DNA from: Perna viridis
Taxonomy: Eukaryota
Direction: 5' to 3'
Assembly: GCA_037379345.1 (NCBI GenBank)
Contig: CM074511.1
Coordinates: 54,566,862 to 54,630,861 of the forward strand
DNA length: 64,000 bases
This document shows, in pieces, positions 6,142 to 45,315 of the stretch. A program made the translations under genes and the position numbers. Numbering within the stretch: position 1 is the stretch's first letter; the number at the start of each line of letters is the position of its first letter. Under the pieces are notes generated by a model, which was not told where the DNA came from, did not search any database, and saw only the letters and a program-made list of their open reading frames with translations.

Positions 6142-6852
6142 TTACTCTGCATAAACAACGAAAACCATTCCTATTACGAAGTATTCTCCACGTTTTATAG
6201 TGACTGTTGCTGAGTTATCAAATCTTTGGTCCCACAGACAACGTGAAGTTATCATCATACTTTGGTCACCCTTCTGTGCCGCGAGGACATGACATATTAT
6301 TTTGAATCTGTGCATGTTAAGTGATTTAACTTTTTCTTTAATAATCTCACTTGTCAGTTTACATTTTTGTCCCATAGCTTGTGGGTCATATTCCTTTTCT
6401 GTTATGTTTTCTGTGAAAACATTCCTCATAATGTCTTCAACTTTTGACTCCAGGAATCGGTAATCTGGTAGCATTTTGTACGTGTTCTCATATTTGACTT
6501 CCGGTTGAGGTACCTCAGCCGATGAAGCGCTCCCTCTGTCATGGTCTTTATGACTATGGCCTTTGACAGATCCGTGTCCAACAGAATGAGTCGTATCTTT
6601 ACGAGTAAAACTTCTAGATCTGTGTCGTCCATGATGGGAGTTGGCATGTCCAGCATTCATTGTGGCACCTTTTAGAGCATGATGTTTGTCGTGCTTATCA
6701 TGGTGCTTCTCATGATGTTTGTCATGGTGTTTGTCAGACTTGTCATGATGCTTATCTGGTGAATGGTGTTTCTCATGGTGATGCCCACTTTTTTCTGATT
6801 CACCGTGACTCCCTTTTGACGAATGGACTTTTTTGTCCGATTTCTCTTTCAT
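6142..6852 (-). CDS. Tctex-1 domain dynein light chain (TCTEX1D1/DYNLT5-like) with His-rich N-terminal extension
   Basis: C-terminal YENTYKM.P..F....V..I..YDP..CK..SE.IK.KVK.L...RFKII.HV...K.Q.....SRCLWD..FDN.A...VFVVY.E is the Tctex-1 signature. Single-exon CDS; a splice acceptor (cattatag) 2 nt before the ATG implies a 5'UTR intron. Confidence 0.92.
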   Translation of the reverse strand: MKEKSDKKVHSSKGSHGESEKSGHHHEKHHSPDKHHDKSDKHHDKHHEKHHDKHDKHHALKGATMNAGHANSHHGRHRSRSFTRKDTTHSVGHGSVKGHSHKDHDRGSASSAEVPQPEVKYENTYKMLPDYRFLESKVEDIMRNVFTENITEKEYDPQAMGQKCKLTSEIIKEKVKSLNMHRFKIICHVLAAQKGDQSMMITSRCLWDQRFDNSATVTIKRGEYFVIGMVFVVYAE

Positions 6853-20127: not shown

Positions 20128-20419
20128 TCATACTTGATCATAGTAAAAGTCAGGACCGACAGTCACTTCGCCATCATGATCGCTTTTTCTAGACCTTACT
20201 GAAGACCTAAGAACGTCACCGTTATCAATTCTGTCTTCGACTATTATCTCGTTGTCACGTAAAGTTTCGTCGTGGCGTTTGCTCTTCCTCTTCTTCTTTC
20301 GACGACGACGCCTGCGCTCTTCTTCCTGGTCATAAGTGTACTCTAATTCCGGGAGATAAAGATTGCGGGTACCTGTCGAAGTGACGTAAGTGTTCTCTCT
20401 AGCACGGTCGGTGTAACCC
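20128..20419 (-). CDS. Terminal coding exon: (L)GYTDRARENTYVTSTGTRNLYLPELEYTYDQEEERRRRRKKKRKSKRHDETLRDNEIIVEDRIDNGDVLRSSVRSRKSDHDGEVTVGPDFYYDQV*
   Basis: Phase-2 acceptor tttacag, open to TGA. Confidence 0.85.
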
Positions 20420-23400
20420 CTGTAAATATATGGTATTGTTCATTAGAGTCACTACATTACTTAGTCTTCTATGCGTTGACTAATGTCTAAAAAATTACAT
20501 TACTCGAATACATTATTTTTACAGTTTTAATGAATATCATCAGACAAAACAAGTATTAGTTGTATTTTATATTTAGGTGGATCAAAATAATAAGGACTCA
20601 CAAGTCTTCTGTTCCATCTGGCCTCAGTACTCGGTACTTGTTAATTTCAAACTCATCCGACGGTTGCCTGAAATTAGACATATAAATCAAATGAAAACAT
20701 TTTATAGGGCAGGATTGTAATCGTATGATAACGAATTTATTCGGTCAAACCGGAAATGAAAATTGCTATCAGAAACATTTTTTGTAACTGTTGTAAATGG
20801 ACGTTGCAATAAAATTTTAAGTTGTGAGAATATTAAAGTATAATTTGCTTACAAATCAAAAAACGCTACACGATTTTTCATTCTTTTTCTTCATTCATGC
20901 ATTGTTCGTTACTATGTCAATGGTAACCACAGGCCCTTGGGGCCAGGATTTGTTTAATTACAAAAAAATATAATTAAATCATTTTGTTAGAGGAGGAGAT
21001 AGACAAAACACTGGGCATAGTATAAACAGTAATAAATATCAAGCGGACACGTCTGAGAACATAATCACTCATATATGGAAACAAAATAATTTAATGATAT
21101 TTTTTTGGTGATAAAAATAATATCCTGGTCCCAAGGGCTTGTGATGGTAACGAATAATAGAACTAATAATATGAATCAAGGATAACGACTAGATAGGGAA
21201 AATAGACACCAAATAAAAAACATGAAATAACACAACTAACACTACAAAGAGACATTGAAAAAATCCTGATGTAATTTGCGGTCACCCACCATACACCCAT
21301 ATATAACTCCTGTGTTATGCTTAACCTAAACCAATTATCTAAGTTCTTGAAGTGCTAATGTTTAGTGTTTTAAGAAACCCAATCAATAACCTACCTGATA
21401 TGGACTTGCATATAGCAAGATAAATCAAAATGATCATTATAAGTCTTATGAAAATTTGCAAGTATACAAGTACTATGTTATAATGTTATGTTTACATGAT
21501 CAACTATTTCAGACTCACATTTTACTTTACATTTGGTTCCTACTGTTTAAACTCACCTGTAAGATTTATGTTTCTTTCTACGAATCTTCCTTACGGCTGT
21601 CGTTTCTGGCTCACTGAAAATTAAATAGTCGATTTCGTTAATGGTCAACCTACATGAAATGATTCTTGCACAAAACGTAACCGGTTTAACATTTCTATTT
21701 TGTTTCAATAAGCCATTTAATGAAAAATTGATACACAGCTTCTACGAACAATCTTTAAATAAAGCAAACTGAACATACTTGCAAGAAGCACTACTTACTC
21801 AATATATACAGGTTCTTCGTAGAATCTTGGAATCTCAAATTTACGAACTGTTATAACTGAGTCCTCAGGTTCTTCGTAATAAACTGGTATTTCAACTCTC
21901 TTGGGTGCTGGTTGTGGTTCAACCTTTTCTTTCTTCCCTCCACAACAAAGAGCTGCACAGTATGCTGAAAACATTATCAAAAGTTAGAAAGAGTATTCTT
22001 AATAAGGAACAGTCAATTTTACTTGTTAACAGATAAAATTGATAAAATTCGGATTTAAACCCTAATTTGTGGTTCAACCTTTTCTCTCTTCCCTCCACAA
22101 CAAAGAGCTGCACAGTATGCTGAAAACATTATCAAAAGTTAGAAAGAGTATTCTTAATAAGGAACAGTCAATTTTACTTGTTAACAGATTAAATTGATAA
22201 AATTCGGATTTAAACCCTAATTTGTGGTTCAACCTTTTCTCTCTTCCCTCCACAACAAAGAGCTGCACAGTATGCTGAAAACATTATCAAAAGTCAGAAA
22301 GAGTATTCTTAATAAGGAACAGTCAAATTTTATTTGTTAACAGAGAAAATTGATAAAATTCGGATTTAAACCCTAATTTAGAGAATTTAAATACATTTTT
22401 TTTTGTATTTGCAATATATTGTTTTATTTTTCTGAAAACTAATGATTTCTTATCATTTACCTTGACAGCAACAACATACGATGATTCCTATTATTAGCAA
22501 GAGGAAGAAAAGAATAGCCAGGATGATAGCCGCTATTTCCCCTGCTGTTAAACCACTTGATTCTCCACCAGTAGCTGCTCCTGTATTAGGTGCTATAAGA
22601 AAAAGAGAACATTTACAAGATTGTTGACAGTAAGTATATGTCGGTCTTTTAAATGAAAAATTAGGGAAAACAATAACGACAACGAAAAACTTACATTCTC
22701 CCGGTATTTTATTTTAAAATTATAATTGTTTATACAGACTTCATTAGATCAAAAAGAAGACTATTCATATATAATTACTTCAGCATAATGCATCATCGAA
22801 GAAATGTGAGAAAAGAAGCAAAATAAAATCAGTTTACAAGGATTATCGCCAACGTGTTTAGTTCATGAATCTTAGATTTTTGTGTGTGAAAGTGGTTTAA
22901 GGACATTTTATTTTGTTTTTTTTTTATGGTATTGTGAGATGTTTTTTTTTTTTAAATGGGGAAATGTTTTTGTTTGGAAATGGGACACATTTGGTGGAAA
23001 AAAACGAAGGGCATTTGTGAAATTATATGTTGCAAAATGAGTACAAAACTATAACATCCACCTAAAACTATGATATTAAACATTATGAATACATGTGTAT
23101 ATTAAAAGACATTATACACAAGAATGTTCAAAGTATTTCGCAATCACTTCTTTTGTTCCTCGTGTTTTAATTGTATTAAAAGTTATAATCTACTATTGTT
23201 TATCAATTTTACATTGACAGCACATTCTACTGACTTGCACCACTTCCCACTGAAAGACTGAATGCGATATCAGCTGACTGTCCGACAGTATTTGTAGCTC
23301 TGCATGTGTATGTGCCTGCATCACTAGCGGTATTCATGTCGACTACAAGCGTCTTTGTAGTTGTAGAAAGAGCGTTGCCGTTATAAGACCAAACCCATTC

Positions 23401-26400
23401 TGTTGCGGATGGATTTGCACGGGTGTCACAGCTTAGTGTTATTGGCGTTCCGACGACTTGGCTTACACTATTTTGGGTAACAGCGCTGACAGGAATATCT
23501 ACAAAACGGTAAGATTTTATTGTTAAAAATACTTAGCGAACTCTGTAAAACTTGCATACTCACTACCTGAACAATCAAACATCATTTGGTAATCATAAAG
23601 CAATCACTCATCGATTAAGCTAGCTGTTATTAATACATGGGATCAGTCAAACAACTACCAAATACGACGTAAAAAGAAAATCCGATTGTTTCCGAAGATA
23701 CTCTCAAGTTGTGTGTATATTCTTTCCTAGCATATATAAAATTTGACCATAAGTATCGGTAAAAAAATACCGAGGAGTGAACACTGAGACAATTCAGAAT
23801 ACCGAGGAGTGAACACTGAGACAATTCAGATGACCGAGGAGTGAACACTGAGACAGATGCGTCAAAATCCAAATCAGAACGTAAGAATGATCAAATGAAT
23901 AAGCATACATTGTACATCAACGTCTTCCCAGGTTTGTCTACTTCCACGAGAATTTGTTGCTTTACACAAATGCAATCCGTCGTTTTGTGTCCATTTAGCA
24001 TTGTTAATAGTAAGAACAGCTCCTTGATGTATCATAACATCATTGTGATACCATTGGTACGTTGGTGCTGGATCTCCGTCCGCATCACACGTCAATGTAT
24101 AGCTTTCTCCTTCCTTTATTACAACACCAGCTGGTGTAATAGTTATCCAAGAAGGTGCAGCTAAAAATGCAAATATAACATTAACTTCTTTTAGTATTCA
24201 TAATGTATGGTAATACAAATACTTCTACAAAAAATGTATTTCATTTAAGTGTGTACCTAAATTTTATTTGCCTCTATTTAAATTTCTTGAAATTGTAGCC
24301 AGTGGTTTAGTTCGATGATAGACGCAAATTACATAACTTTCAACAAATTTAATTCACATATTTCAAGGGAATATGATTTCAATGAACACATAGTAGCTTC
24401 ATTAACAAAAATTTTGATCACTAAGATGATTTGAGTTTGAAATGCCACCCATCAAAAAAAGTTTTGCTAAATTTTATAGTTACTTCCATTAGATGTTGTG
24501 TACCCCTTAAGCATTAAAGGCATTATACGGTTAATCCAACGGATGTAATAATGATATATGATGAGAAAAAGTCAGTACGCTAACTGTTCAGTTAGAAAAT
24601 TAATAAGTTAATTGTTCCCGTACTATTAAAAAAGAAGAAATTATCTTATAAAATGAGGTTTACAAGATACACATACTTGAGGTATCAACAGTGAAGGCAA
24701 CAACCGAAGAATCCCCTTGTCCAACAGCATTTACGGCAGAACATCTGTATGACCCTGCATCCGACGCTACCAAGTTAGTAATTGTCAGGCTAGGATTGGC
24801 TAAATTTCCACCAACGTATTTTGTCCCGTCAACTGTTATGATTTGACCTCCTTTTGTCCAAACTACATTTGTAGCGCTAGGATTAGCTACATATGAGCAA
24901 CTTATTGTGGCTGATTGTCCCCCAAGTCCTTGAGCAGGCGTCGTAATAGTTACATCAGGTACATCTACAATAACATGATATAACTATATATTTATTTAAG
25001 GCACTGAAGAAGGTCATTTGTTGACTGAAAATTTTGCCCATTATATACTTTATTATAGTATGTTAACATCTTTATCGGTATCGTTGTACAATCCTTTAGA
25101 CTTATATAAATATTTTTGTTTGTGCTGCATCGTCATGACTGGACGATCCGATACCCATTAAGTTTCCTGGTTTGCAGATTCCTTTAGACTTATATATACT
25201 GTGTGAGTTATGGAGAAAGTGACTTTTTGATTGCCATATCAAAAAATAATAAAATAAAAACAACATAAAAATACTAAAGTGCACAACTAAAAAGAAATTA
25301 GAACAGTATACTTACAGCGAACGTCAACATTGACTGATGCTTCTCCGCTGCCATAGTTATTAGTAGCTCGACAAGTGTAAGATCCAGTATCAGTACGGGA
25401 TGATGACGCAATATTTAGTGCTGCTCCGGTGGAAATTTCAGTATTAGAATTTCCTTTATACCATCTGTATGTAATTGTTGGACTTCCTTGTGCAGAACAA
25501 GTTGCCGTTATTCCAGTTCCTTCGGTAACAGTGATTGGATTAGGCGTCACAGTTACTCCAGTAGGTGCATCTGAAATTAAAGGACAACATTGCTTACTTT
25601 TAAATAAAGATCACCCACGCGAGTTAAATTGACAACACATTAATTATTTGAATCAGGAGATTGAGTTCGTGACTTGCTTGACAAATGGGAAACAAATCAC
25701 ATTAAATAAGGTAGCTATCATTGGTAAATTTATATATGCCTTTGGTTCTTTTAAGTTTTAAGTTCGGTTGGGTTGTATGTCTCTTCATACATTCACCATT
25801 TCCAGTTTCTTGTTTACTGTAATATATTTTTATCAAAGCAATTACTATATTTCAATATCACTACCCATTGTCTTACCTCCTGAGATGGTAAGATAAACTT
25901 GGTTACTGCTTCCTGTTCCTATAGAGTTGGTGGCCTGACATACGTATTGTCCCTGGTCATCCTGTACTACGGAATTGATCGTTAGAGAAGGAACAGATAA
26001 GGTCCCTCCGGTGTATCTACCACTGTTTATGCTTATAGTGGTAGGTTGGTTGTTTTCATATTTCTGCCATGTAACCGACGTGGCAGATGGGTTGGACTGG
26101 ATGGTACATGTAATTGTTACCGAGTTTCCTACTTTGACAGACGCTTGAACTGTTGCTGTTACAGTAGGTACATCTATAAAATTAAAAGGGAAACTTTCAA
26201 AAACAATTTTTACTTTATGTGGCAAGAATTTTGCAACAAATGATACAATTTGTGCATGTAATTCTTTTTAAAAGACCTATTGAGCAATAACTGTATTGGC
26301 AGTTACCCTAATATCTTTCCACTTATTCTATCCCTATAAAGACCTTTAATATGTGAGTATACTTTCGGAAACTTTCAATTATTGTGTTCAAAAGAACATG

Positions 26401-29400
26401 GATTTCAAAGTATGTACATTAACATGACTCTTACTTCCAACCACATCCAAAAATGCTTGTGAACTTTGACCAGTTCCAACGGCATTCGTTGCATGGCAAA
26501 CGTAGTTTCCTTCATCAGCAAGATCAACATTGTTGATGGTTAGTGAAGGAGATATCAAAGTACCACCGTCATATTTAGTCGATGTTGACGGATTTAATGT
26601 TGCCGTATTTCCATTGGGTGTCTGTTTTGTCCAGTAAACTGTGGAATGTTGTGGGTTAGCTGATATAACACAATCAATGGTAATAGTATTACCAATGTTT
26701 GTAGAGTAGGTACTCTGGGAAATGGTCACAACTGGTATATCTACAAATAGAATCATGCATTATTGTTATAACATGCATGGGAGAAAAGCTGTATTTTAAA
26801 ATAGTTATAGACTAACTCTGAAATGTAAATTGAACTTGAGTATAATATTTGTCTAGAAAATATTGAATATACCATTGGTATCAGATACAAGAGTTAATTA
26901 TTCGACATGGATTTCAGCAAAAATTAATGAAAGAAAAGAGCAAAATAAAAGACAAACATAAAGACGATTAGTAAATGGAAAGTCAAAAAGGAAAAATCGG
27001 AACAACAAATTGCAAAATCAAGGCAGGAAAAAACCAGTAAGTTTGAAACCGCAATAGTTCTGACTTGGTATAGACATTTTTAAAAGACATGGTAGGTAAA
27101 ACCAGGTTTTATATCGCGCTATACCCCCGCATCAATAACTGTTAACTGTCTCCGGTGGATTGCTAACGGGCAGCGTGACATTGACACTTGTTCAAATCAC
27201 AAGTCATAACAATACCGAAGATACATTCATGATATCATGAAAATCTAAACCTATATTTTTGTCAGAAGCAAAATAGTTCTCAATAAGGCCTGGATACAGT
27301 TAATAACACTGCTTCAGGCTGTGTAGGAGACGCATTTTTCATCATGCCCTTTGTTCAAAAGCCTATCTCTCAGGCAACAATGGCGGGCGTATTAATAAAT
27401 CAGATTATTACCTAATTATAAGGTTTTATCTTGTTTATTAAATGTACACATATTTTTCTATATTTTCAAAATTTATTCAGGACAGGGCGATCTATTGCAT
27501 TGTTGATGTACTATTGCACGGTACAATAGTCTCCTTGAGGAGTCTATTGCATTGACCCAATAATGACCTTTATCTAAGCCTATTGTTTGGTTGAATTTTT
27601 TTAAGCGCTTCATTGAATTGGAATTTACACACAAAAAACTCGTGTGTAAAAACGTAGATGTGACTCTCGTCTGCCAATTCGTAAACATGGAGCGGTCAAT
27701 TTCCTATTCCTGGTCGAATGGTTGTCTCTTTGACATATTCCCCATTTCCATTCTTTATTATATCTCATAGACAAATTAGGTAATAAAACAGTTATTAAAT
27801 GGGTTGGATGCAATAGACCAGAACATTTGTCCTTTGGTACTGAGAATGATCAAGTGTTCTTCTTGATCATTCTCAGTACCAAAGGACAAATGTTCTGGTC
27901 TATTGCATCCAACCCATTTAAGAACTGTATAATAGTGGCTAATAGATCCGTCATATTATAACAACTGTGAAATATAAACATTATACACAGAGTAAGCTGG
28001 AATGTTAATGCAAATGAAAGGGATTTATATTTTACAATCAAAATCGTGTCGTTTGTCATATATTATTGTACGGAGATGACTACTGTCGTCGAAATCGAGA
28101 TGAAGATCCAAGAATGATTCGGAGAAAGCCGTGTTAAAGTCTCTGTAATTTCTAGTTCTGGTGGATAAATGGACGGAAGCAACTCTTCAAATTTAGGTTT
28201 ACTAAGTGAAAGAGCATCGCTGATATATCGATGTGTGAATTAAAAGGGAACTTACTTCCAATAACTGTGAGAGGACCCTGTGAACTTTGTCCTGTCCCAA
28301 CAGAGTTTGCGGCTAAACAAACATATCTAGCTTCATCATTACTGTTCAAGTTCGAAATTGTGAGTGATGGTGTGGTTATTGTAGAACCAGAGTATCTGGA
28401 GTTGGACATATCAACAGTAGAAGTTGTAGCTCCTGTAATTTTATGCCAGTATACGGAAGTTGCTTGCGGATTAGCAGATACTGTACAACCGAGAGTAATT
28501 GAGTCACCGTAGTTTCCTGTGAAGGATGTCTGTGTTAATGTTACACTTGGAACACCTGGAAAATAATTTAGAGACATGTAGATAATGTCAGGTGTAACAG
28601 GTCATTCCAGGACAAATAAATTTAAATGAAAGTTACAACAGAACAACGTAAAACAATGTAATACTTTAGATGTCTTCAGTAGTGAAAAAGACTCTTACAT
28701 AATTCGACACAAAAACTTACTTCCGGTAACAGCCAAAACTACTTGTGTACTCTGTCCGGTTCCGACGCTGTTAGTTGCGAAACATACATAGGTACCCTGA
28801 TCCGAAAGTGCAGCACTTGTTATGGTTAAAGATGGTGTGGTAGTAGAAGAACCAGTAAACCTGCCTCCCATGTTAACGTTGTTTGTGTTGCCACCTGAAA
28901 TGAACTGCCAATAGACAGAAGTTGCCTGTGGATCAGCTGTTACTTGACAATCGATTGTAACAGAACTACCAACGTTTACTGTATAGGCAGGGGTCGGAGC
29001 GACGACGACTGGAATATCTGAAAAGAAATTATTTCTGTAATCAGTGTGTTTGTTATTTACATGATTGACCTTAACAAAATTTGTTTGTTTTGTTTGTTTG
29101 TTGGGGTTTAACGTCCGAGCAGCAATATTTCAGCTATGTTCAGACAATGAACATGAAATGGATGATAAAATGAACATGAAATGAAAAAAAGAAAGGATGG
29201 GTCACAAGGATAATAGGGTCGACAAATTTTGATTGCCACTGGAAAAAGGGGAGGATGAGTAAGGTCGGGCAATTTAGCCTCCTGTGGCGGAGCGCAAAGG
29301 TTCCTACTCCTATCGAATACCACAGCAGGGTTCTTTAACGTGCGAGGAACGTGGCATCTTTCCCAACACGGTGCACCACTATGGTTTGCGGTCAGGTTTT

Positions 29401-38400: not shown

Positions 38401-41400
38401 AAAGAAAATAAAATGCAGTTCTTACCATTTTACTTTAGGTTATGCAAATTGCCACGATACACGGCTTTTGATCAATATAGTGGCGTAACTATAAAAAAAT
38501 TCTACACAAGTTTGAAAAAAATATTGATTAAAGACGTGGTGAATAAGCTAGTAAACATCAATAACGTCATTAATATTAACTACTTCTCATTAATTTAGCT
38601 ATTACTTACTTCCTGTGACATCTAGGAATGATGTTTGACTGCTTCCTGTTCCAACGCTATTGGCAGCAGAACAAATATAATTCCCTTCATCGCTTGTTGC
38701 GGCGTTACTTATAGTAAGTGATGGTGTGGTTACTGTACCACCAGTTAACCGGCTTCCATCAATGGTTACCGTCGTCTGTTGTCCATTGACTATCCTCAGC
38801 CATGTAACAGATGTATGAGTTGGGTTCGCAGAAACCGTGCATTGTAGTGTAATAGTTCCACCTTGTGTCACCGAATAACTGTTAGACAGTATGGAGACAG
38901 TTGGAATGGCTGAAAAAAGGACGAAAAACAAAATTTTACATGTGGATATATATTGATAGGATTCTTTGTTTATAGGGGGTATAGCTGTTGATTATAGGAA
39001 TGGCTGTGCCCTGAAGATTTGTTCCATGTATATTAAGTGAGTTGTGCACTGCAAGATTTTAAATCGTGAAATATGCTAATAACACTGAACGAAAAAAGAA
39101 ACTTTTTCATCACCCTTAAACATTTAAGGATTGGCTTAAGTTGGTTTATTTAAGTACCTCCGAGAACATCAAGAAACGTCTGGGAACTTTGTCCTGTACC
39201 GATGCTGTTTGAGGCAAAACAAATATAGTTAGCCTCGTCACTAACAGCAGCATTGTTTATCGTAAGAGATGGGTTGTTGACAGAAGAACCGCTGTACTTG
39301 TTGTTGCTGTTTGCTATGTTAACAGTTGTCGTCACGCCATTCTGGATTTTACGCCAGAAGACGATGGTGTGTGTAGGATTAGCAGTGACGGTACAAACAA
39401 GCGTAACAGAGCCTCCAATGTTGGTACTGTAGGATGAGCTTTGTATGGTAACACTGGGTACATCTACAACATAAAGAATTATATTTGTAGAGTCAGCTTA
39501 TATTTTTATTGATATCGTTAAACACAACTTGTTTTGGACCCAAGGTAGTGAGTGTGTAATATTCTGGTTTTTGCAACGATGTTATTGTTTTTTACTCGTT
39601 TTCTTTTTGAATATGGTAATATCTAATATATTTGAACCAATACCATAAATATAATAAATAGAAAGTTTTAACGACTGCGATCATTATTCGTTATATAAGA
39701 ATCGATTGCAAAAGATGCGTTTAATGTTGAACCATATATATTTGTATCGTACTCTTATCTAAAAGTTTTTTTTTCCTTGGTTGAAATTGAAAAGTTTGTT
39801 TGTATAGTCAAGTATTTATGAAAGTTCTTGGAGATTAAATACATGAATTGGAGTTATTTCTTGTAAGCAATTCTATTAAATCGAATTTGGTTTTTAAATA
39901 TAATCAGCTTATATTTAAGGACTTTAAGTCAAATTATAATTCTTTATTGATGCAATAAACAGTAAAACTATACTCAGTGAAAACATGCCAGAATTTCGAA
40001 ATCAATTTATAGTATGGGTAGAATGATTTGAATAATAATTGTAAAGAAAATAAATCTTCATTTTGAGGTAAAAAACTTAATAGTTATATATTGTATATTG
40101 AACCCCTCATTTGACAAAGAAAGGTTTTCTTTATTTACGCAATAGTTACTTACTGCCAACTACATCCAATGTAGCAATCGAACTTTGACCTGTACCAACA
40201 CTGTTTGTAGCATAGCAAATATAATCAGCTTTATCACTTGATGCTGCATTAGATATTGTAAGAGATGGTGTCGAAACAGTAGATCCTGAATATTTCCCGC
40301 CACTGTTTATCACGTCAATGTCGGACGTGACACCATTTACTGTTTTCCTCCAAAATACTTGATAGTGAGCTGGATTGGAAGTTATTAAGCAACCCAGAGT
40401 GACTGTACCTCCAGTGTTAACTTGATAGTTGCTAATTGTCACTTGGACATTGGGAATTTCTGAAAACAAGCAACAGTAAAGGAGTTTCATTTAATAAAAG
40501 AGTGGCCAAAAAATGATGCCACAAATCAATAAAATATCAGCATCTTAATAAAGTACTTGAAACTTATTAGGCTTATGCAGTAGGACAGCAGTAATTCTTG
40601 TGTTTAAAATTCTAAAAAATAAAGTCAACAGAAGTATTTGTCACAAATGGCAATGTATACTTACGACCTGACACGCCTAGAACGGCTTGCTGACTGGATC
40701 CTGTTCCAATGGAATTAACAGCGTAACATATATAGTTTCCTCTGTCGCTCAAATCTGCATTTAGTATGGTCAGAGATGGAGAAACGATAGTAGATCCACC
40801 ATACTTGCTTGGGTTTGTAGAGGGACCGATGTTAGTGCTTTGTCCATTGACATCTCTGGTCCAGTAGACACTAGTAGCGGCGGGAGTAGCAGAAACGGTA
40901 CAACCAATTGTGATGGAATTTCCTACTTGGACATTGTAGGTAGACCCACCTATTGTTACTACGGGGACACCTGAAATATGAAAAGAAAGTTTCATTTTAA
41001 ATTTCAGACAGTTTTAATGCTTATGTTGTGTTCCGTGTAATGCATTTCTTAAACCTAAAGAAAAACGAAAGCGCGTGCTACCAAATTTACAGATACAAGT
41101 ACATTTTGTATTATTTTTTGGCAAGTGATGTGACGCATGTGAATTACTAGTTTTCATTTCCATGTAATTAAGACTAATAGAACTTACCCCCAGTTACATC
41201 TAGAAAGGTATTTTGGCTATTTGATGTTCCAATGCTGTTAGATGCGTAGCAAATATAGGTTCCCTCATCATCGATGGTTGCCCCAGTGATGGTAAAGGAT
41301 GGATTGGTTGTAGTACCACCACTATACCGACTGTTGGTAGATATAGTGACATCGGTCGGTACACCATTCACCAACTTTCTCCAGTATACATTGTTGGCGG

Positions 41401-44400
41401 ATGGTGTGCCGGTAACTGTACATGGAATAGTGACCTGTTGTCCAATCAACACGGAGTAAGAAGTAGAGGGTATCGAAACCGTCAATAAATCTATTAAATT
41501 ATAAGAAAATGAATTATTTGATTTTCATCTTGATTTCCATCTTAACATCATTTTGTGAGTGTTGAATATCGTTTTGATGTACAAAGGATTCGGGCATATG
41601 CTTTACTTTTCAAAATGCATTTTTTCAATAACTCTTTTAATTGTAAATGTATACCACATGATGTTATCGTTCAACCTACATCATAGTGAAGTGAGAAGTT
41701 AACCCGTCACGTTAAGCACTCTTAACAGCAATAAACATTAACAATTAACACGAAGCACGCACTGCAACAAGGAGAAGATTGTTGAAAAACTTGTCTGTAA
41801 AGCAACACATTGAACACAACATCCACACAAAATATAATTGAGAATAGCCTTAATTCTTTAAAAATAGAATTCAGAAATTGAGTCACGTTAATCAAAAGTT
41901 GTAGCAACGTATATACTGTATATACTTAAGGTGCTCACAGATTTTCTGTTAGAGTCCTTTCATATGTTGACCAAATATGTCTAACAAAAATAAAAACATT
42001 GTTACGACTTACTGCCAGTGACGCTAAGTTGTGTAGGATTACTGTTTCCAGTTCCGACGGTGTTAGTAGCTGAACATGTGTAAGACCCCACATCAGACGA
42101 CGCAAGATTTATAATTGTCAATGACGGGTTGGTAGTAGTCATTCCATTATATTTTGCTGTGTTTGTAAAGGTTGTAATGATATTGTTTGTTTGACCATTG
42201 TTAAATGTCCATGATATCGACTGGAGTTGGCTATTAGGGGAGGATACGGTACAGGGTATTGTAACTTGGCTTCCAGTTGTTCCTGAGTAAGAACTTTGTG
42301 GAATGGTTACTGTAGGAGCAGTTCCTGCAAAGATAAAATTAGTGAGAAGCAAGTGTCATACACTTTTTTGCGTTTATTAGACTTTTTATACCCACAAGAC
42401 CTGTTTGTTCATCTAAAGACTTCTGTTTTCTCATTCATTCACTTAAAAATGAAGAATGGTCAATTTATCATTTTCGTTATTTTTTTCTTACTTTAGATCG
42501 GCTTACCTTGCACTGTTAATGTGATTTGGTTAGAATTAACAGTTGTTGCTCCGTTTGATGCTTGGCAATAGTACGTTCCAGCATCTGAAGTTGCTACGCT
42601 GTTAATGGTCAAGGATGGATTGTTGATATTTCCGTTACTATATTTAGAAGAACTACTGGTTGTGATCTGATTGTTATTGAAGTACCATCTGAGTGATGTA
42701 GCGGTTCCAGTTACTTCGCATCGCAAAACTGCCATAGTACCGGCTGTCTGAACATAATTAAGCTGAGGCGCATTTACAGATAGAGGATCTACAATTGAAG
42801 AGTATGTCTCGGTTTAACTACCCCATTGCTTTACTTTAACCAATAGTATTAACGAAATATATTAATACATGAAATGAATCCTAATTCCTTTGATTTAGGT
42901 TTCACATACTTTAAATTATGCAGGTTCGTATTTTTTAATAAGTGTTATTTCTTATAATGTTTCTTTAAACTTGTGGAAAAAGAAATGCATTGTGTTTTAA
43001 ATAAAGACTTTTAAAACCAAAACATCAGTCAGTCCGTTATTGTTACTATTCCTTACTGGTGACACTGAGTTGTAGTGACACTGTCTGTAGATTGTTGCCC
43101 CTAGTTTGTTGGTGCTCCACATCACAGTATAGTGTATCTCCATTATTAGACAAAGATGGTACCCAGGTGAGGACACCAGTAACTGTATATGTCTTGTCTG
43201 TCTGTAAGGCTGCATTTGTATTGACTCCAGAATTAAGTTTAGTGTTGCCAATCCTAAATGACATAGCAGGAGCGGGTATACCGCCTAAACTGACACATGT
43301 CCATTGTTTTGTTATTCCAGGCGTCAGACTTGTAGGTCCTGTCAATGTTGGAGTATTGGGTTCCGCTGTAATATTAAAAAGACGATTTTCTAACCATTGG
43401 TGACTCCTGTATATAAGGTCTGTCTTAGTCATTGTTGGGAATATGTAAAATTAAAAAAAAAGAACTGACTAAGCGTGTCAATGACATCTCTTAAAACTTC
43501 CTTTAACTTTTACTTAATATCTAAAAGTATTGATTTTTAAATATAAAGAGTTCCCAATTTTTAGTACCATTAAACTTTAAAGAACTTGTCTTTAAATCAA
43601 TTCAAAAAACATTAAAAAAATCCAATTAAAATTCAGCATGTCTGCATTAATATTAAGAATTTTCCATAATTTCTCAGTTACTGAATTGTTCCCCAAAACC
43701 GCTTAACATGATTTCAACTTTATATTAATTCTGAAAGAAAATTGAATTGATAAGTACATACTATAGACCTGAAAGTACCAAGTAAAAGCTAGGGGATTCT
43801 GGAGAACATTGTTATCAGCTTGACATTCATAGACAGACAAATGGTGAGATTTATCGGCTGTGAATGTATATGTGTTAGTTGTTACACCGTTGGTAGTTGT
43901 ATATGACTGGTCTACCGGGGTTCCTCCCCGTAACCAGGTCACAGATGGCGATGGTTCTCCGCCTGTAGACGAACACGTTAAGGTGATACTGTTGCCCTCT
44001 ACTATAAATGTTGGGCCCGTAATAACGGGAGGACCAGGTGCAGCTATTAAAGAAAGGGAGTTAATGTTTTAATTAAGCATGCAGTTATATAGAAAGTATA
44101 GGAAAACTACACTTCTTAAGTCAGAAAATTGTCTCAAACCAAAATATATACTAGTATAAAGTAACGTAAGAAGAGTATTTTTCTGGAGTTATATATACAC
44201 CGTGTAAGAAGATGGTAGGAAATACAAGTTTGCCTATTATTGTAATAAAACTAGAGAGTGTATACTATTTTTAAAAGAAATTTGAAAATATTTTCTTGAC
44301 ATGATTTCGACGCCTAGCGAAAATCAAAGCCTTTGATTTTTGCAACAGTGACTCCAATTGATCATACCATATCTTACGACGCTATATATAAACACGACCA

Positions 44401-45315
44401 GACTGTCCTTTTCATACGTGAAAGAAAGATAGAAATATTATTTGGTAATTTTTTATAAATCAAGAAAATCAGTAAAAATGTTTTGAGGGGTTAAGTTGTT
44501 GTACTAATTTGTAATTATGTACATTATTGTATAATAATTGACGCTGTACATAAAATAAAAATTTTGATACCCGTTCCAATGGCTAGCTTGGCTAATGGGA
44601 TTTTCAGAATTTTAAGTCTATTTTTACTAATATTTATTTCCATAAATTAATTGTTCGCTTGTTGACATTAATCAAAATCGACTCTGTGATATTTCGTCTA
44701 CAGAAAAAATAACTCAAACTTGATATCATGTTGTCGGGACATCTGTGATTCCATTTTTGGGGTTTGATTTCTTTTAGAATGAGTGTACTTAAAAAAAATG
44801 CTGCTGTAAAAGAAGCAAAGGTACAATATTAGAGCGATGCTTAAATTATTGCTGTGAAAGAAGCAAAGATTTTAAATATTCGGTAATACGAAATGAAATA
44901 CTGCAGTATAATAATTAAGCTTTTATACAAAATATATTAAACTAAAAAAAATAGTAAAAGAATGCCCATTTGCCCTCATTGTATTTGGGACCCCTGTTAT
45001 GTACAGAATAATGATCAATTCAAACAGTCGCTGTATAAACGACATACCATTGAATTATGTGTCAATATTTGTTTTCCTATAAGAGAGTTTTAACAAAAGT
45101 TTGCTTTGGAAACAGGCTCAGAGGGAGAACAAACGAGAATCATTAAAGTCCGAGAATATGTGTTATAACCCATAGCTGAGTGTACTATACGTTTTGTGTA
45201 ACTAGGAGATTTGTGAACATATGATATGTAAGAACTTACATGTACTTTGGCTAAGAACAGTTGATATGATTGAAAGCACTGTGGGTAAAAGCAGAAGTGG
45301 AATTCTGTTATCCAT
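20128..45315 (-). CDS. Giant multi-exon type I transmembrane Ig-superfamily receptor: signal peptide + 31 Ig domains + TM + Tyr-rich cytoplasmic tail, about 3325 aa. Likely to be auto-annotated hemicentin/titin-like, but it has no vWA/EGF domains and does have a TM helix
   Basis: 37 coding exons bounded by AG/GT join in frame, total 9978 nt. All 31 Ig exons are phase 1-1 with lengths divisible by 3, and each has the two canonical Cys. Most have the C-strand Trp and the DxGxYxC motif. TM segment IAAIILAILFFLLLIIGIIV; stop TGA at 20128-20130. Confidence 0.88.
20602..20667 (-). CDS. Cytoplasmic exon 3: (R)QPSDEFEINKYRVLRPDGTED
   Basis: 66 nt, phase 2-2, tttcag/gtgagt. Confidence 0.8.
20928..21143. 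mobile_element. hAT-like MITE in an intron of the Ig receptor gene
   Basis: TIR CACA(G/A)GCCCTTGGG(G/A)CCAGGAT; exact 8-bp TSD ATGGTAAC at 20920-20927 and 21144-21151. Confidence 0.85.
21557..21613 (-). CDS. Cytoplasmic exon 2: (D)EPETTAVRKIRRKKHKSY
   Basis: 57 nt, phase 2-2, ttttcag/gtgagt. Confidence 0.8.
21799..21964 (-). CDS. Cytoplasmic exon 1: AYCAALCCGGKKEKVEPQPAPKRVEIPVYYEEPEDSVITVRKFEIPRFYEEPVYI
   Basis: Phase 1-2, ttttcag/gtaagt; acceptor is triplicated upstream. Confidence 0.85.
21912..22379. repeat. 155-bp tandem triplication spanning an intron/exon acceptor boundary
   Basis: Units start at 21912, 22067 and 22222, with a few substitutions between copies. Confidence 0.95.
22461..22592 (-). 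CDS. Transmembrane exon: PNTGAATGGESSGLTAGEIAAIILAILFFLLLIIGIIVCCCCQ
   Basis: 132 nt, phase 1-1, about 20-aa hydrophobic stretch, cttatag/gtaaat. Confidence 0.9.
23235..23498 (-). CDS. Ig exon 31 (membrane-proximal; absent from ORF track)
   Basis: 264 nt if donor A/gtcagt is used; weaker phase-1 donors lie a few nt upstream. LSCDTRANPSATEWVW..DAGTYTC. Confidence 0.82.
23768..23852. repeat. About 32-bp tandem repeat (ccgaggagtgaacactgagacaattcaga..), about 2.7 copies
   Basis: Direct reading. Confidence 0.85.
23909..24160 (-). CDS. Ig exon 30 (short C2-like: CDADGDPAPTYQW..DGLHLC)
   Basis: 252 nt, phase 1-1. Confidence 0.88.
24677..24964 (-). CDS. Ig exon 29 (absent from ORF track)
   Basis: 288 nt, phase 1-1, ISCSYVANPSATNVVW..DAGSYRC. 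Confidence 0.9.
25000..25038 (+). ncRNA. Candidate minimal type I hammerhead ribozyme (Penelope/retrozyme type)
   Basis: GGCA-CTGAAGA-A-GGTCA tttgt TGACT-GAAA-ATTT-TGCC: stem I, CUGANGA core, stem II, GAAA, palindromic minimal stem III. Confidence 0.5.
25316..25570 (-). CDS. Ig exon 28 (short C2-like, Siglec/CEACAM-like: CSAQGSPTITYRW..DTGSYTC)
   Basis: 255 nt, phase 1-1. Confidence 0.9.
25877..26173 (-). CDS. Ig exon 27
   Basis: 297 nt, phase 1-1. Confidence 0.9.
26435..26740 (-). CDS. Ig exon 26
   Basis: 306 nt, phase 1-1. Confidence 0.9.
27795..27921. repeat. Perfect palindrome, 60-bp arms, 7-nt loop, inside an intronic repeat
   Basis: 27795-27854 is the exact reverse complement of 27862-27921. 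Confidence 0.95.
28256..28555 (-). CDS. Ig exon 25
   Basis: 300 nt, phase 1-1. Confidence 0.9.
28721..29017 (-). CDS. Ig exon 24 (absent from ORF track)
   Basis: 297 nt, phase 1-1, IPVVVAPTPAYTVNVGSSVTIDC..DQGTYVC. Confidence 0.9.
29080..29600. mobile_element. SINE-like/RTE-3'-end composite retroposon insertion in the Ig23-Ig24 intron
   Basis: GC-richer block with a (TTTG)n end, gggttctttaacgtgc SINE-core-like motif, and ttagtcgcc..ttacgaca..cacgggg RTE-like terminus. Recognised from memory, not searched. Confidence 0.55.
29724..30023 (-). CDS. Ig exon 23
   Basis: 300 nt, phase 1-1. Confidence 0.9.
30137..30436 (-). CDS. Ig exon 22 (absent from ORF track)
   Basis: 300 nt, phase 1-1, IPVVNVLSTSYSVNVGNSITLQC..DEGFYIC. 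Confidence 0.9.
30651..30953 (-). CDS. Ig exon 21
   Basis: 303 nt, phase 1-1, donor gtgagt. Confidence 0.88.
31215..31517 (-). CDS. Ig exon 20
   Basis: 303 nt, phase 1-1. Confidence 0.9.
32259..32558 (-). CDS. Ig exon 19
   Basis: 300 nt, phase 1-1. Confidence 0.9.
32778..33077 (-). CDS. Ig exon 18
   Basis: 300 nt, phase 1-1. Confidence 0.9.
33274..33570 (-). CDS. Ig exon 17
   Basis: 297 nt, phase 1-1. Confidence 0.9.
33787..34083 (-). CDS. Ig exon 16
   Basis: 297 nt, phase 1-1. Confidence 0.9.
34330..34635 (-). CDS. Ig exon 15
   Basis: 306 nt, phase 1-1. Confidence 0.9.
34848..35147 (-). CDS. Ig exon 14
   Basis: 300 nt, phase 1-1. Confidence 0.9.
35462..35764 (-). CDS. Ig exon 13
   Basis: 303 nt, phase 1-1. 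Confidence 0.9.
35919..36390. repeat. 33-bp VNTR (14 units + partial) containing the Ig12 splice donor
   Basis: Unit caacactgagataatagggttacttacttc(ct/ca/ga)a; starts every 33 nt from 35919 to 36348. Confidence 0.97.
36375..36680 (-). CDS. Ig exon 12 (its donor site is amplified in the 33-bp VNTR)
   Basis: 306 nt, phase 1-1. Confidence 0.9.
37128..37436 (-). CDS. Ig exon 11
   Basis: 309 nt, phase 1-1. Confidence 0.9.
37599..37918. repeat. Imperfect foldback/MITE-like element in the Ig10-Ig11 intron
   Basis: acctcccgtaagagcaggtgt ... acacctgctccaacagggagat inverted pair. Confidence 0.5.
38096..38395 (-). CDS. Ig exon 10 (absent from ORF track: IPTVTVAQSQYSGNIGQTVTLVC..VYW..DEAYYQC)
   Basis: 300 nt, phase 1-1, hand-translated and open. 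Confidence 0.9.
38610..38909 (-). CDS. Ig exon 9
   Basis: 300 nt, phase 1-1. Confidence 0.9.
39158..39463 (-). CDS. Ig exon 8
   Basis: 306 nt, phase 1-1, donor gtactt. Confidence 0.88.
40154..40459 (-). CDS. Ig exon 7
   Basis: 306 nt, phase 1-1. Confidence 0.9.
40665..40970 (-). CDS. Ig exon 6
   Basis: 306 nt, phase 1-1. Confidence 0.9.
41188..41490 (-). CDS. Ig exon 5
   Basis: 303 nt, phase 1-1. Confidence 0.9.
42013..42324 (-). CDS. Ig exon 4
   Basis: 312 nt, phase 1-1. Confidence 0.9.
42507..42788 (-). CDS. Ig exon 3
   Basis: 282 nt, phase 1-1, PSLTI..DAGTYYC. Confidence 0.9.
43057..43365 (-). CDS. Ig exon 2 (C2-type: WTCVSLGGIPAP..LYCDVEH)
   Basis: 309 nt, phase 1-1. Confidence 0.9.
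43762..44043 (-). CDS. Ig exon 1 (C2-type, nephrin/sidestep-like: APGPPVITGP..LTCSSTGGEPSPSVTW..YECQADN)
   Basis: 282 nt, phase 1-1, taatag/gtatgt. Confidence 0.9.
45240..45315 (-). CDS. Ig receptor first coding exon: signal peptide MDNRIPLLLLPTVLSIISTVLSQST (exon starts in 5'UTR at about 45362)
   Basis: ATG at 45315, hydrophobic core, phase-1 donor GTAAGT, upstream acceptor tttacag. Not in the ORF track. Confidence 0.8.

What the first reader, a model, noticed from the sequence alone, without database searches (positions are those of the whole stretch)
20128..45315. A 31-Ig-domain membrane receptor built as an array of interchangeable, frame-symmetric exon cassettes
Seen: signal peptide + 31 Ig + TM + tail, with one domain per exon. 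Every Ig exon is phase 1-1 with length divisible by 3 (252-312 nt). About 24 of them (Ig4-Ig27) are diverged paralogues sharing P.V.....Y....G..V...C.V.ANP..T.V.W..Y.G.T...PSLTI....DEG.Y.C.A.N.VG.G.S..T.L.V.G. They vary mainly in the C'-D loop (e.g. IGPSTNPSK, MGTNNNNK, TTSVGTR) and are very Ser/Thr/Asn-rich and charge-poor. None shows a stop or frameshift. Established: hemicentin has vWA/EGF domains and no TM; Dscam and FREPs diversify invertebrate Ig receptors. Inference: any subset of the exons can be skipped in frame, giving a length-tunable (about 120 nm if extended, at 4 nm per domain) or combinatorially diversified adhesion/immune receptor that pipelines would mislabel hemicentin-like. 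Phase-1 Ig exons are common in IgSF genes, so symmetry permits but does not prove alternative splicing.
Basis: partly seen in the sequence, partly recalled or inferred. Interest (0 to 1): 0.8.

Follow-up and report, generated by a model that had tools for sequence, protein, structure and literature searches.

The report
Giant 31-Ig mussel membrane receptor gene
This is a real, expressed mollusc gene for a very long cell-surface protein made of 31 antibody-like domains, one per exon, but public RNA data show the tested exons are all spliced in, so it looks like a fixed long rod rather than a mix-and-match receptor.

Summary
On the minus strand, 45315-20128, lies a 35-exon gene. It has a signal-peptide exon, 31 one-domain Ig exons, a TM exon and two tail exons. 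Every Ig exon is phase 1-1, 252-312 nt, with AG/GT sites and no stops. The CDS is 9,855 nt (3,284 aa).

The splicing inference is not supported where tested. In RNA assemblies from four studies, single 6-8 kb contigs join Ig12 through Ig23 consecutively at the predicted sites. No canonical exon-skipping joint appears.

The cassettes are not interchangeable. Ig4-27 are about 49% identical with no neighbour effect. Ig9-Ig31 match a paralogous gene on another chromosome one-to-one and in order, at 56-68% identity.

None is characterised. RefSeq lists scallop isoforms that lack exactly one or two cassettes, so some skipping in the family remains possible.

A new point is that the 3,032-aa ectodomain has one N-glycosylation sequon against about 70 expected. 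Mussel and scallop relatives share this depletion.

Most likely this is a constitutive, roughly 130 nm Ig-rod adhesion receptor with a conserved tyrosine-rich tail. The scan did not report this gene type before on other DNA.

The parts
45240..45315 (-). Exon 1: start codon and signal peptide (25 codons + 1 base)
   Evidence: ATG at 45315, hydrophobic core, GTAAGT donor in phase 1. A Mytilus edulis RefSeq relative has a signal peptide directly before Ig1.
43762..44043 (-). Ig1 exon (282 nt)
   Evidence: Pfam Ig_3 and C2-set_2; phase 1-1
43057..43365 (-). Ig2 exon (309 nt), CD80-like C2-set
   Evidence: Pfam C2-set_2 E 4e-11; phase 1-1
42507..42788 (-). Ig3 exon (282 nt)
   Evidence: Pfam I-set E 1.7e-14
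42013..42324 (-). Ig4 exon (312 nt), first cassette
41188..41490 (-). Ig5 cassette exon (303 nt)
40665..40970 (-). Ig6 cassette exon (306 nt)
   Evidence: sister of C5 cassette 15
40154..40459 (-). Ig7 cassette exon (306 nt)
39158..39463 (-). Ig8 cassette exon (306 nt)
   Evidence: AlphaFold model pLDDT 96.4, I-set-like strands
38610..38909 (-). Ig9 cassette exon (300 nt)
   Evidence: positional orthologue C5 cassette 18
38096..38395 (-). Ig10 cassette exon (300 nt)
   Evidence: orthologue C5 cassette 19
37128..37436 (-). Ig11 cassette exon (309 nt)
   Evidence: Pfam I-set
36375..36680 (-). Ig12 cassette exon (306 nt)
   Evidence: the donor at 36375 is joined to Ig13 in RNA contigs
35913..36405 (.). 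33-nt x 14.9 tandem repeat copying the 3' end of Ig12 and its donor, in intron 12
   Evidence: TRF. The RNA contigs carry the genuine exon end, not the repeat variant.
35462..35764 (-). Ig13 cassette exon (303 nt)
   Evidence: both borders seen in RNA contigs
34848..35147 (-). Ig14 cassette exon (300 nt)
   Evidence: RNA joints; orthologue C5 cassette 23, support 99
34330..34635 (-). Ig15 cassette exon (306 nt)
   Evidence: RNA joints; orthologue C5 cassette 24
33787..34083 (-). Ig16 cassette exon (297 nt)
   Evidence: RNA joints
33274..33570 (-). Ig17 cassette exon (297 nt)
   Evidence: RNA joints; orthologue C5 cassette 26
32778..33077 (-). Ig18 cassette exon (300 nt)
   Evidence: RNA joints; orthologue C5 cassette 27
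32259..32558 (-). Ig19 cassette exon (300 nt); holds the only N-x-S/T sequon
   Evidence: RNA joints; sequon NTS
31215..31517 (-). Ig20 cassette exon (303 nt)
   Evidence: RNA joints; orthologue C5 cassette 29
30651..30953 (-). Ig21 cassette exon (303 nt)
   Evidence: RNA joints
30137..30436 (-). Ig22 cassette exon (300 nt)
   Evidence: RNA joints; orthologue C5 cassette 31
29724..30023 (-). Ig23 cassette exon (300 nt)
   Evidence: acceptor seen in RNA; orthologue C5 cassette 32, support 99
28721..29017 (-). Ig24 cassette exon (297 nt)
   Evidence: orthologue C5 cassette 33, support 99
28256..28555 (-). Ig25 cassette exon (300 nt)
   Evidence: orthologue C5 cassette 34
26435..26740 (-). Ig26 cassette exon (306 nt)
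   Evidence: orthologue C5 cassette 35
25877..26173 (-). Ig27 cassette exon (297 nt), last cassette
   Evidence: orthologues in the C5 and C2 genes
25316..25570 (-). Ig28 exon (255 nt), distinct membrane-proximal type
   Evidence: Pfam Ig_3 and I-set; acceptor; orthologues in the C5 and C2 genes
24677..24964 (-). Ig29 exon (288 nt)
23909..24160 (-). Ig30 exon (252 nt)
23235..23498 (-). Ig31 exon (264 nt)
   Evidence: only three other copies in the genome
22461..22592 (-). Stalk and transmembrane exon, ending in a CCCC cluster
   Evidence: hydrophobic 23-residue segment; acceptor and phase-1 donor read from the sequence
21912..22379 (.). 155-nt x 3 repeat that triplicates the acceptor and start of tail exon 1
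   Evidence: TRF, 97% matches. The two upstream copies run into a stop after about 13 codons.
21799..21964 (-). Cytoplasmic tail exon 1 (Cys-rich juxtamembrane part, two YEEP-type motifs)
   Evidence: splice sites by sequence only; motifs shared with Mytilus relatives
20128..20419 (-). Cytoplasmic tail exon 2 with stop (polybasic run, C-terminal YYDQV)
   Evidence: three paralogous copies on C5; conserved in M. edulis

Best explanation
This is a complete, expressed gene for a 3,284-aa type I membrane protein. It belongs to a mollusc-wide, uncharacterised family that pipelines call 'hemicentin-1-like'. Shown: the layout is a signal peptide, a three-domain head (Ig1-2 of the CD80-like C2-set kind, then Ig3), 24 related I-set cassettes joined without linkers, four distinct membrane-proximal Ig domains, one TM helix with a Cys cluster, and a roughly 150-aa tail. 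The tail carries conserved tyrosine motifs and a polybasic run. In every RNA assembly examined, the tested cassettes (Ig12-Ig23) are spliced in constitutively. The array is old and stable, because each cassette from Ig9 onward has its own counterpart, in the same order, in a paralogous gene. The ectodomain is almost free of N-glycosylation sequons. Inferred: the 31 domains form a semi-rigid rod of about 125-135 nm that holds the head far from the membrane, as sialoadhesin's Ig stalk does on a smaller scale. The bare, Ser/Thr/Asn-rich, charge-poor surface is kept glycan-free because it takes part in protein-protein contacts, either lateral or trans. Engagement is relayed through tyrosine phosphorylation of the tail.
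For: Gene model and phases. Ig identity: Pfam; best solved relatives are contactin-2, Robo, titin, Dscam; AlphaFold pLDDT 96.4, Ig fold. Expression and constitutive splicing: one search found 14 runs from at least four studies that hold about 0.47 of the words, which equals the exon share of the stretch. In one search, one contig per run covers Ig13-Ig23 with continuous record coordinates and 10 canonical joints at the predicted sites, and its loose end runs into the genuine Ig12 donor. Splice signals: 21 of 34 donors are GTAAGT and the median intron is 310 nt. Stability: within-gene identity is 49% with no lag effect. Against the C5 paralogue, 21 reciprocal best hits from Ig9 onward are collinear at 56-68% identity, with Ig8 the one exception among the cassettes, and the tree gives 17 sister pairs. 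Family. Tail conservation. Sequon purge: 1 observed against 70.0 +/- 6.6, and against 32.3 +/- 3.6 when column composition is kept. It is shared by paralogues and by mussel and scallop relatives. PMC5562741 reports that secretory proteins lose sequons at buried sites and interfaces.
Against: Only 11 of 34 introns were checked with RNA. Contigs drop rare isoforms, so minor or tissue-specific skipping is not excluded. RefSeq lists isoforms of an Argopecten homologue that lack one or two cassettes. Other homologues carry up to 31 numbered isoforms. Function, ligand, cell type, rod geometry, tail phosphorylation and the reason for the sequon purge are all inferred, with no experiment on any family member found. 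The TM and tail splice sites rest on sequence and paralogue comparison only. The joined 3,284-aa model was not sent to any search or folding tool; it was used only inside local scripts.
Confidence: 0.65

Rival explanations
1. One reading: the frame-symmetric Ig exons are alternatively spliced cassettes, and skipping subsets gives a length-tunable or combinatorially diversified adhesion or immune receptor.
For: All 31 Ig exons are phase 1-1 and multiples of 3. Argopecten irradians RefSeq isoforms X1-X8 differ by exact deletion of one (101-103 aa) or two (202 aa) cassettes. Two M. edulis models differ by one 99-aa cassette. Homologues are annotated with up to X31 isoforms. Four RNA runs of the same species hold almost none of the gene, so not all tissues were sampled.
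Against: Four studies' RNA contigs include Ig12-Ig23 without any canonical skipping joint. The contigs are not broken at exon borders, as they would be if alternative junctions were common. Donors are strong and introns short. Each cassette is conserved position by position against the paralogue. Several of the scallop 'skips' involve near-identical neighbouring cassettes, where read mapping is ambiguous.
Confidence: 0.12
2. It is an innate immune pattern-recognition receptor whose diversity comes from the multigene family and its expanding arrays, not from splicing.
For: It belongs to a multigene family with lineage-specific cassette amplification. The C5 gene has a two-cassette unit repeated five times. 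The C2 gene has at least 52 cassettes, some identical. The head domains diverge faster than the stalk: Ig1 and Ig3 are 46-52% identical to the paralogue, against 56-68% for cassettes. The tyrosine-rich tail could signal.
Against: Exons are nearly invariant across four independent RNA data sets, with 0-2 differences per roughly 300 nt. There is no lectin, FBG, C1q or other recognition domain. The gene's own array has had no duplication for a long time, with a maximum of 62% identity between cassettes. No expression or challenge data were available.
Confidence: 0.1
3. It is mainly a structural surface component. Glycan-free Ig rods pack side by side or end to end into long links or a coat (for example between cilia, microvilli or cells), and the membrane anchor only fixes them.
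For: Sequons are almost completely eliminated even under a column-preserving null. This is conserved between mussels and scallops, and the literature links sequon loss to buried or interface surfaces. The cassettes are more conserved than the head. There are no linkers between domains.
Against: There is no direct evidence of self-association, and no complex prediction was run. The conserved tail with tyrosine motifs suggests signalling rather than pure anchoring. The sequon purge could have other causes, such as avoidance of lectin recognition or dense O-glycosylation.
Confidence: 0.1

Closest known systems
Molluscan 'hemicentin-1-like' / HMCN gene models. The closest are Mytilus edulis CAG2194105/CAG2194106 and M. 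trossulus XP_063420714. Others include M. edulis XP_071159627 and Argopecten irradians XP_069133957 and XP_069133859-66.
   Same: They share the cassette consensus, scoring about 100 bits per domain over up to 62 domains. The M. edulis and M. trossulus models share the Ig1/Ig3 head at about 60% identity. They share the Ig28-31 module, the TM plus Cys cluster and the tail motifs. Most also share the sequon depletion.
   Different: Domain numbers differ widely, from 10 to 62 in the models. None of them is characterised. Some relatives are sequon-rich instead (Gigantopelta, M. coruscus, Pomacea; O/E 1.8-2.5). No model from this window's own species turned up in the length range searched.
Hemicentin-1 / HIM-4 (secreted matrix protein)
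   Same: A long uninterrupted array of I-set Ig domains. This is the reason for the automatic name.
   Different: Here there is no vWA domain, no EGF or fibulin-type C-terminus, and a TM helix plus cytoplasmic tail are present.
Sialoadhesin (Siglec-1)
   Same: A type I membrane protein whose ectodomain is only Ig domains. In sialoadhesin the long stalk projects the head beyond the cell's own coat (established knowledge). It appears as a distant hit (E 1.5e-95, 29% identity).
   Different: Sialoadhesin has 17 domains rather than 31. It has an N-terminal V-set sialic-acid-binding domain, which is absent here because Ig1 is Ig_3/C2-set_2. Its tail is short and lacks the motifs seen here.
Dscam
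   Same: An invertebrate IgSF receptor; its Ig domains are among the best solved sequence relatives.
   Different: Dscam has 10 Ig plus 6 FN3 domains, and its diversity comes from clusters of mutually exclusive exons that encode half-domains. Here there is no FN3, each exon is a whole domain, and all tested exons are included together.
Nephrin / Kirre (IRM) adhesion receptors
   Same: CD80-like C2-set domains at the N-terminus. The tail ends in YYDQV, which resembles nephrin's YDxV sites (recalled from memory, not tested).
   Different: There is no FN3 domain, there are 31 rather than 5-8 Ig domains, and sequence identity is only about 26%.
Titin / obscurin / UNC-89 tandem Ig rods
   Same: Linker-less tandem I-set domains. 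Titin is among the best solved sequence matches and UNC-89 appears.
   Different: Those proteins are intracellular, carry kinase and FN3 domains, and show ordinary sequon frequency (O/E 1.29 for UNC-89). This protein has a signal peptide, conserved disulfide cysteines, a TM and purged sequons.

Membership tests
Hemicentin | N-terminal von Willebrand A domain | tested here: not met
   There is no open frame of 30 aa or more with such content between the signal exon and Ig1. Pfam on Ig1 gives Ig families only.
Hemicentin | C-terminal EGF repeats and fibulin-type module; secreted, no TM | tested here: not met
   After Ig31 come a TM exon and two tail exons with no Pfam hit.
Hemicentin | Long tandem array of Ig domains | tested here: met
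   31 Ig exons.
Dscam | Clusters of mutually exclusive alternative exons encoding half Ig domains | tested here: not met
   Each exon encodes a whole domain. Ig12-Ig23 are all present together in RNA contigs.
Dscam | Fibronectin type III domains before the TM | tested here: not met
   No FN3 hit in Ig28-31 or in the TM or tail frames.
Nephrin / IRM | C2-set Ig domains followed by an FN3 domain and a TM | tested here: not met
   C2-set_2 hits in Ig1 and Ig2 only; no FN3.
Nephrin / IRM | Tail YDxV phosphotyrosine sites that bind Nck | tested here: inconclusive
   One C-terminal YYDQV is present. The motif definition is from memory, and binding is not testable here.
Sialoadhesin / Siglec | N-terminal V-set domain with a sialic-acid-binding arginine | tested here: not met
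   Ig1's best Pfam hits are Ig_3, Ig_2 and C2-set_2. V-set scores only 18.4 bits, below its cut-off.
Molluscan TM 'hemicentin-1-like' Ig-array family (uncharacterised) | Cassette consensus (P.V..Y..G..V.L.C.V.ANP..T.V.W ... PSLTI ... SDEG.Y.C.A.NS.GTG.S...L.V.G) repeated many times | tested here: met
   A profile of Ig4-27 retrieves these proteins at about 100 bits per domain, with up to 62 stretches.
Molluscan TM 'hemicentin-1-like' Ig-array family (uncharacterised) | Shared C-terminal module: Ig28-31 types, TM with Cys cluster, tail with Y motifs and a polybasic run | tested here: met
   The C-terminus aligns to the end of M. edulis XP_071159627 at 43% over 623 aa. The tail aligns to CAG2194105 at 39%. 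Motif alignment is, and paralogous tail exons are.
Titin / UNC-89 | Intracellular, with kinase and FN3 domains and no signal peptide or TM | tested here: not met
   A signal peptide and a TM are present, and no kinase or FN3 domain was found.

The most novel reading that the evidence does not exclude
The near-total removal of N-glycosylation sites from a 3,000-residue ectodomain is conserved between mussels and scallops. It may mark a new kind of extracellular structure, in which bare Ig rods of about 130 nm assemble laterally into long links or a lattice between cells, cilia or microvilli. That would be an Ig-based counterpart of the giant cadherin links. Length would be set by gene-specific cassette number and possibly adjusted by occasional cassette skipping.
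Probability: 0.15. Interest if true: 0.7.

Novelty: new member of a known kind. Interest (0 to 1): 0.4.

Why it matters
Bivalve genomes hold many giant multi-Ig genes that are auto-named hemicentin-like, and their function is unknown (PMC13093298). This report adds four things:
- A base-accurate, partly RNA-verified model of a membrane-anchored member of the family.
- Evidence that its 31-domain array is ancient, position-specific and constitutively spliced where tested. This argues against a Dscam-like diversity generator.
- A separation of the family from true hemicentin.
- A sharp and testable family signature, the almost complete loss of N-glycosylation sequons, which points to a surface that must stay bare.
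If that signature reflects ordered self-assembly, the family would be a new type of long-range adhesion structure. If not, this is one more large IgSF adhesion receptor.

Tried and rejected
**Strand.** A plus-strand reading was rejected, because all Ig frames are on the minus strand.

**Extra 5' domain.** I looked for a missing V-set or vWA exon between the signal exon and Ig1. No open frame of 30 aa or more with such content was found.

**Higher-order repeat or recent duplication within the gene.** Identity is flat at 47-51% for lags 1-12, with a maximum of 62%.

**Odd joints in the RNA table.** Examples are 32340>32801 and 32823>35496, plus the 'goes back' rows. They have 23-36 nt sides and non-canonical ends. 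I took them as cross-matches between paralogous cassettes or assembly chimeras, not as splicing.

**Transcript-derived ORFs of this species.** I hoped the word search would return them so that I could check the remaining junctions. None appeared in the length range.

**Literature.** Two searches for functional work on hemicentin-like genes in bivalves gave only annotation-level mentions.

**Structure search.** Foldseek on the cassette model returned generic Ig folds, namely antibody lambda V domains, Robo1 Ig5, Dlar and NCAM2. No informative specific match emerged.

**Within-genome control for the sequon purge.** The C7 array with Ig2-type domains gave 9 observed against 20 expected. It is a noisy control, because my frame finder picked up some false frames.

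**Steps not run.**
Searches were made exon by exon by reference, or with database proteins.

Full report
**1. What is there**

All Ig-like open frames between 23.2 and 44.1 kb lie on the minus strand. I searched each frame for an acceptor and a donor.
- In all 31 cases I found an AG acceptor that leaves two bases before the first full codon and a GT donor that leaves one base after the last. This is phase 1-1.
- Exon lengths are 282, 309, 282, 312, 303, 306, 306, 306, 300, 300, 309, 306, 303, 300, 306, 297, 297, 300, 300, 303, 303, 300, 300, 297, 300, 306, 297, 255, 288, 252 and 264 nt.
- None has a stop, and each peptide has exactly two cysteines.

The rest of the gene is as follows.
- An ATG at 45315 opens a 25-codon signal peptide that ends at a GTAAGT donor in phase 1.
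- After Ig31 comes an exon with a 23-residue hydrophobic helix that ends in CCCC.
- Two tail exons follow, and the stop ends at 20128.
- Joined inside a local script only, the 35 exons give 9,855 nt, or 3,284 aa.
- The joined protein was not sent to any search or folding tool. All searches used single exons by reference or database proteins.

**2. The domains**
- Pfam places every one of the nine Ig exons scanned (Ig1-4, 11, 28-31) in Ig families above the cut-offs: Ig_3, I-set or ig for eight of them, and C2-set_2 for Ig2. Ig1 also hits the CD80-like C2-set family. The TM and tail frames hit nothing.
- An AlphaFold model of Ig8, built on that alignment, has pLDDT 96.4. Its strands run A, A', B, C, C', D, E, F, G.
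- All length variation falls in residues 47-55, between C' and D.
- Substitutions are also frequent in A/A' and C'.
- The nearest solved sequences are contactin-2, Robo, titin and Dscam. Foldseek finds only generic Ig folds.
- The composition is extreme: T 15.6%, S 12.8%, N 8.6%, and D+E+K+R only 7.4%.

**3. Is it spliced combinatorially?**

For the stretch 29880-35870, 14 runs from at least four studies hold about 0.47 of the sampled words. That fraction equals the exonic share of the stretch. Three runs, taken to be DNA and one of them perhaps the assembly's own source, hold 0.78-0.95.

I laid four runs from four studies on the stretch.
- One contig per run, or two in X5, lies on every exon from Ig13 to Ig23. 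The contigs are 6.2-8.0 kb long, plus one of 4.3 kb in X5.
- Record coordinates are continuous. In X1, positions 86-3238 span 3,153 nt, which equals the summed exon lengths.
- All ten introns are removed at the predicted GT-AG sites.
- The unaligned continuation beyond 35764 is identical to the plus strand at 36375 onward. So Ig12's genuine donor is used, not one of the copies in the 33-nt tandem repeat.
- The only other joints have 23-36 nt on one side and non-canonical ends. I read these as cross-matches between cassettes.
- The exon pieces listed differ from the window by 0-2 letters.
- 21 of 34 donors are the full GTAAGT, and the median intron is 310 nt.

So in four independent samples the dominant transcript contains all tested cassettes, and the exon number does not vary among them. 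Contigs cannot exclude rare isoforms, and 23 introns remain untested.

**4. Are the cassettes interchangeable?**

Within the gene, Ig4-27 are 35-62% identical, with a mean of 49%. Neighbours are no more alike than distant cassettes. There has therefore been neither recent duplication nor homogenisation.

The cassette type has at least 424 candidate copies in the 723-Mb genome, grouped in a few large arrays. The Ig31 type occurs in only three other genes (C2 26.96 Mb; C5 9.14 and 9.28 Mb), and the tail exon has three copies on C5.

I fetched the gene at C5 9.10-9.144 Mb and compared it with this one.
- It has the same head, stalk, Ig28-31 module, TM and tail.
- From Ig9 to Ig31, 21 reciprocal best hits are one-to-one and collinear at 56-68% identity. 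The single out-of-order pair among the cassettes is Ig8.
- A quick maximum-likelihood tree gives 17 window/C5 sister pairs, ten of them with support of 90 or more.

The array is therefore older than the gene duplication. Each position has kept its own identity since then.

Growth does happen elsewhere in the family.
- The C5 gene has a two-cassette unit repeated five times.
- The C2 gene has at least 52 cassettes. Some are identical, and it has two exons that hold three domains without introns.

**5. Relatives**

A profile of Ig4-27 run against 1.84 billion representatives finds 874 proteins at E below 1e-30. The top hits are mollusc models:
- Argopecten irradians: 6,335 aa with 62 domains, named 'serine-rich adhesin for platelets-like isoform X31'.
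- Mytilus edulis: 4,924 aa, 'hemicentin-1-like isoform X20'.
- Ylistrum, Pecten, Mizuhopecten, Saccostrea, Aplysia, Gigantopelta and Pomacea.

The closest to this gene are M. edulis CAG2194105/6 and M. trossulus XP_063420714. Their head is about 60% identical, their cassettes 63-78% and the M. edulis tail 39%. The window therefore comes from a mussel relative outside the sampled Mytilus species.

A word search with the C-terminal module of the M. edulis protein returns only such uncharacterised mollusc models. It then finds sialoadhesin, Dscam, NrCAM and nephrin at 23-30% identity.

A 2026 paper states that hemicentin-like multi-Ig proteins are abundant in bivalves and of unknown function (PMC13093298).

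The eight RefSeq isoforms of one Argopecten gene differ by exact loss of one or two cassettes. This is a lead for splicing in the family. Several of those cassettes are near-identical neighbours, where junction reads are ambiguous.

**6.
- The 3,032 aa of Ig exons contain one N-x-S/T sequon. Per-domain shuffles give 70.0 +/- 6.6, and the lowest of 2,000 shuffles gives 45.
- The reversed motif occurs 76 times.
- 23 of the 24 N-x-S/T triplets have proline in the middle.
- When each alignment column's composition is kept, the expectation for Ig4-27 is still 32.3 +/- 3.6.
- The paralogues show 10 against 76 expected (C5) and 0 against 143 expected (C2).
- Scallop and mussel relatives have observed/expected ratios of 0.00-0.16.
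- Some other relatives are enriched at 1.8-2.5, and the intracellular UNC-89 is at 1.3.

Published work shows that secretory proteins lose sequons at buried sites and at interfaces (PMC5562741). I infer two things. The protein does pass through the ER. Most of its surface must stay free of N-glycans, most simply because it makes protein contacts.

**7. The tail**

Mussel relatives share the following, and Pecten shares them in part:
- the TM helix followed by a Cys cluster;
- two YY/FY-E-x-P motifs;
- a TGTR..YLP..EYT block;
- an acidic-then-polybasic run;
- a tyrosine-rich C-terminus, here YYDQV.

This speaks for conserved cytoplasmic partners. What those partners are remains inference.

**8. 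Verdict**

The architecture and the 'not hemicentin' call are right. The proposed combinatorial or length-tuning mechanism is not seen where tested, and the cassettes are not interchangeable.

The best reading is a constitutive, roughly 130 nm Ig-rod adhesion and signalling receptor of a mollusc-wide, uncharacterised family. The sequon purge is the most interesting open point.

Two earlier notes on this window concern the donor repeat and the triplicated acceptor. They describe real repeats. The donor repeat is not used in the contigs seen.

Noticed in passing
window 23235-44043 (all Ig exons); also L001-L014: N-glycosylation sequons are almost completely absent: 1 observed against about 70 expected, and against about 32 under a column-preserving null. 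Paralogues and mussel and scallop relatives share this, while some other relatives are sequon-enriched.
   Followed up: yes
window 35913-36405: A 33-nt unit is repeated 14.9 times in intron 12. It copies the end of Ig12 and its donor. RNA contigs of two runs carry the genuine exon end at 36375, not the repeat variant.
   Followed up: partly
window 21912-22379: A 155-nt unit is repeated three times at 97% identity. It triplicates the acceptor and the first codons of tail exon 1. The two upstream copies would end the protein after about 13 more residues. Which acceptor is used was not tested.
   Followed up: partly
window 31517-32259 (intron between Ig19 and Ig20): RNA contigs pile up here at 3-10 times the exon depth, with many variant letters and loose ends. 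This is probably a transcribed interspersed repeat rather than part of this gene.
   Followed up: no
window 29111-29497: A G+C-richer insert lies in the intron between Ig23 and Ig24. It has a 129-aa minus-strand open frame with no Pfam match, and is possibly a mobile element.
   Followed up: partly
window 6145-6879 (-): An open frame has a His/Lys/Asp-rich N-terminal half and a Tctex-1 dynein light-chain domain (Pfam E 1.7e-23). This is a separate downstream gene.
   Followed up: partly
window 1166-2293 (+) and 15373-18363 (+): Non-LTR retrotransposon remnants with endonuclease and reverse-transcriptase Pfam hits flank the gene.
   Followed up: partly
L008:141-1055 and L009:513-1415 (G000 C2 26.900 and 26.910 Mb): The C2 paralogue has two exons that encode three Ig cassettes in one open frame, which indicates intron loss. 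It also has several cassettes with identical peptides, from recent duplication or assembly collapse.
   Followed up: partly
L001-L003 (G000 C5 9.106-9.119 Mb): The C5 paralogue carries a two-cassette unit amplified five times near its N-terminal end. The rest of its array is collinear with the window gene.
   Followed up: partly
L015-L017 (G000 C7 42.93-42.955 Mb): Another giant Ig gene has a head like Ig1 and Ig3 of this gene, but its stalk is built from about 30 copies of the Ig2-type C2-set domain. Some of these copies contain stops.
   Followed up: partly
G000 C5 9.283-9.330 Mb (-) and 9.456-9.485 Mb (+): Two arrays give pairwise equal scores in inverted orientation, which suggests a large inverted duplication of a family member. 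Several cassettes there contain stop codons.
   Followed up: no
window 23766-23855: A 32-nt unit is repeated 2.8 times in the intron between Ig30 and Ig31.
   Followed up: no
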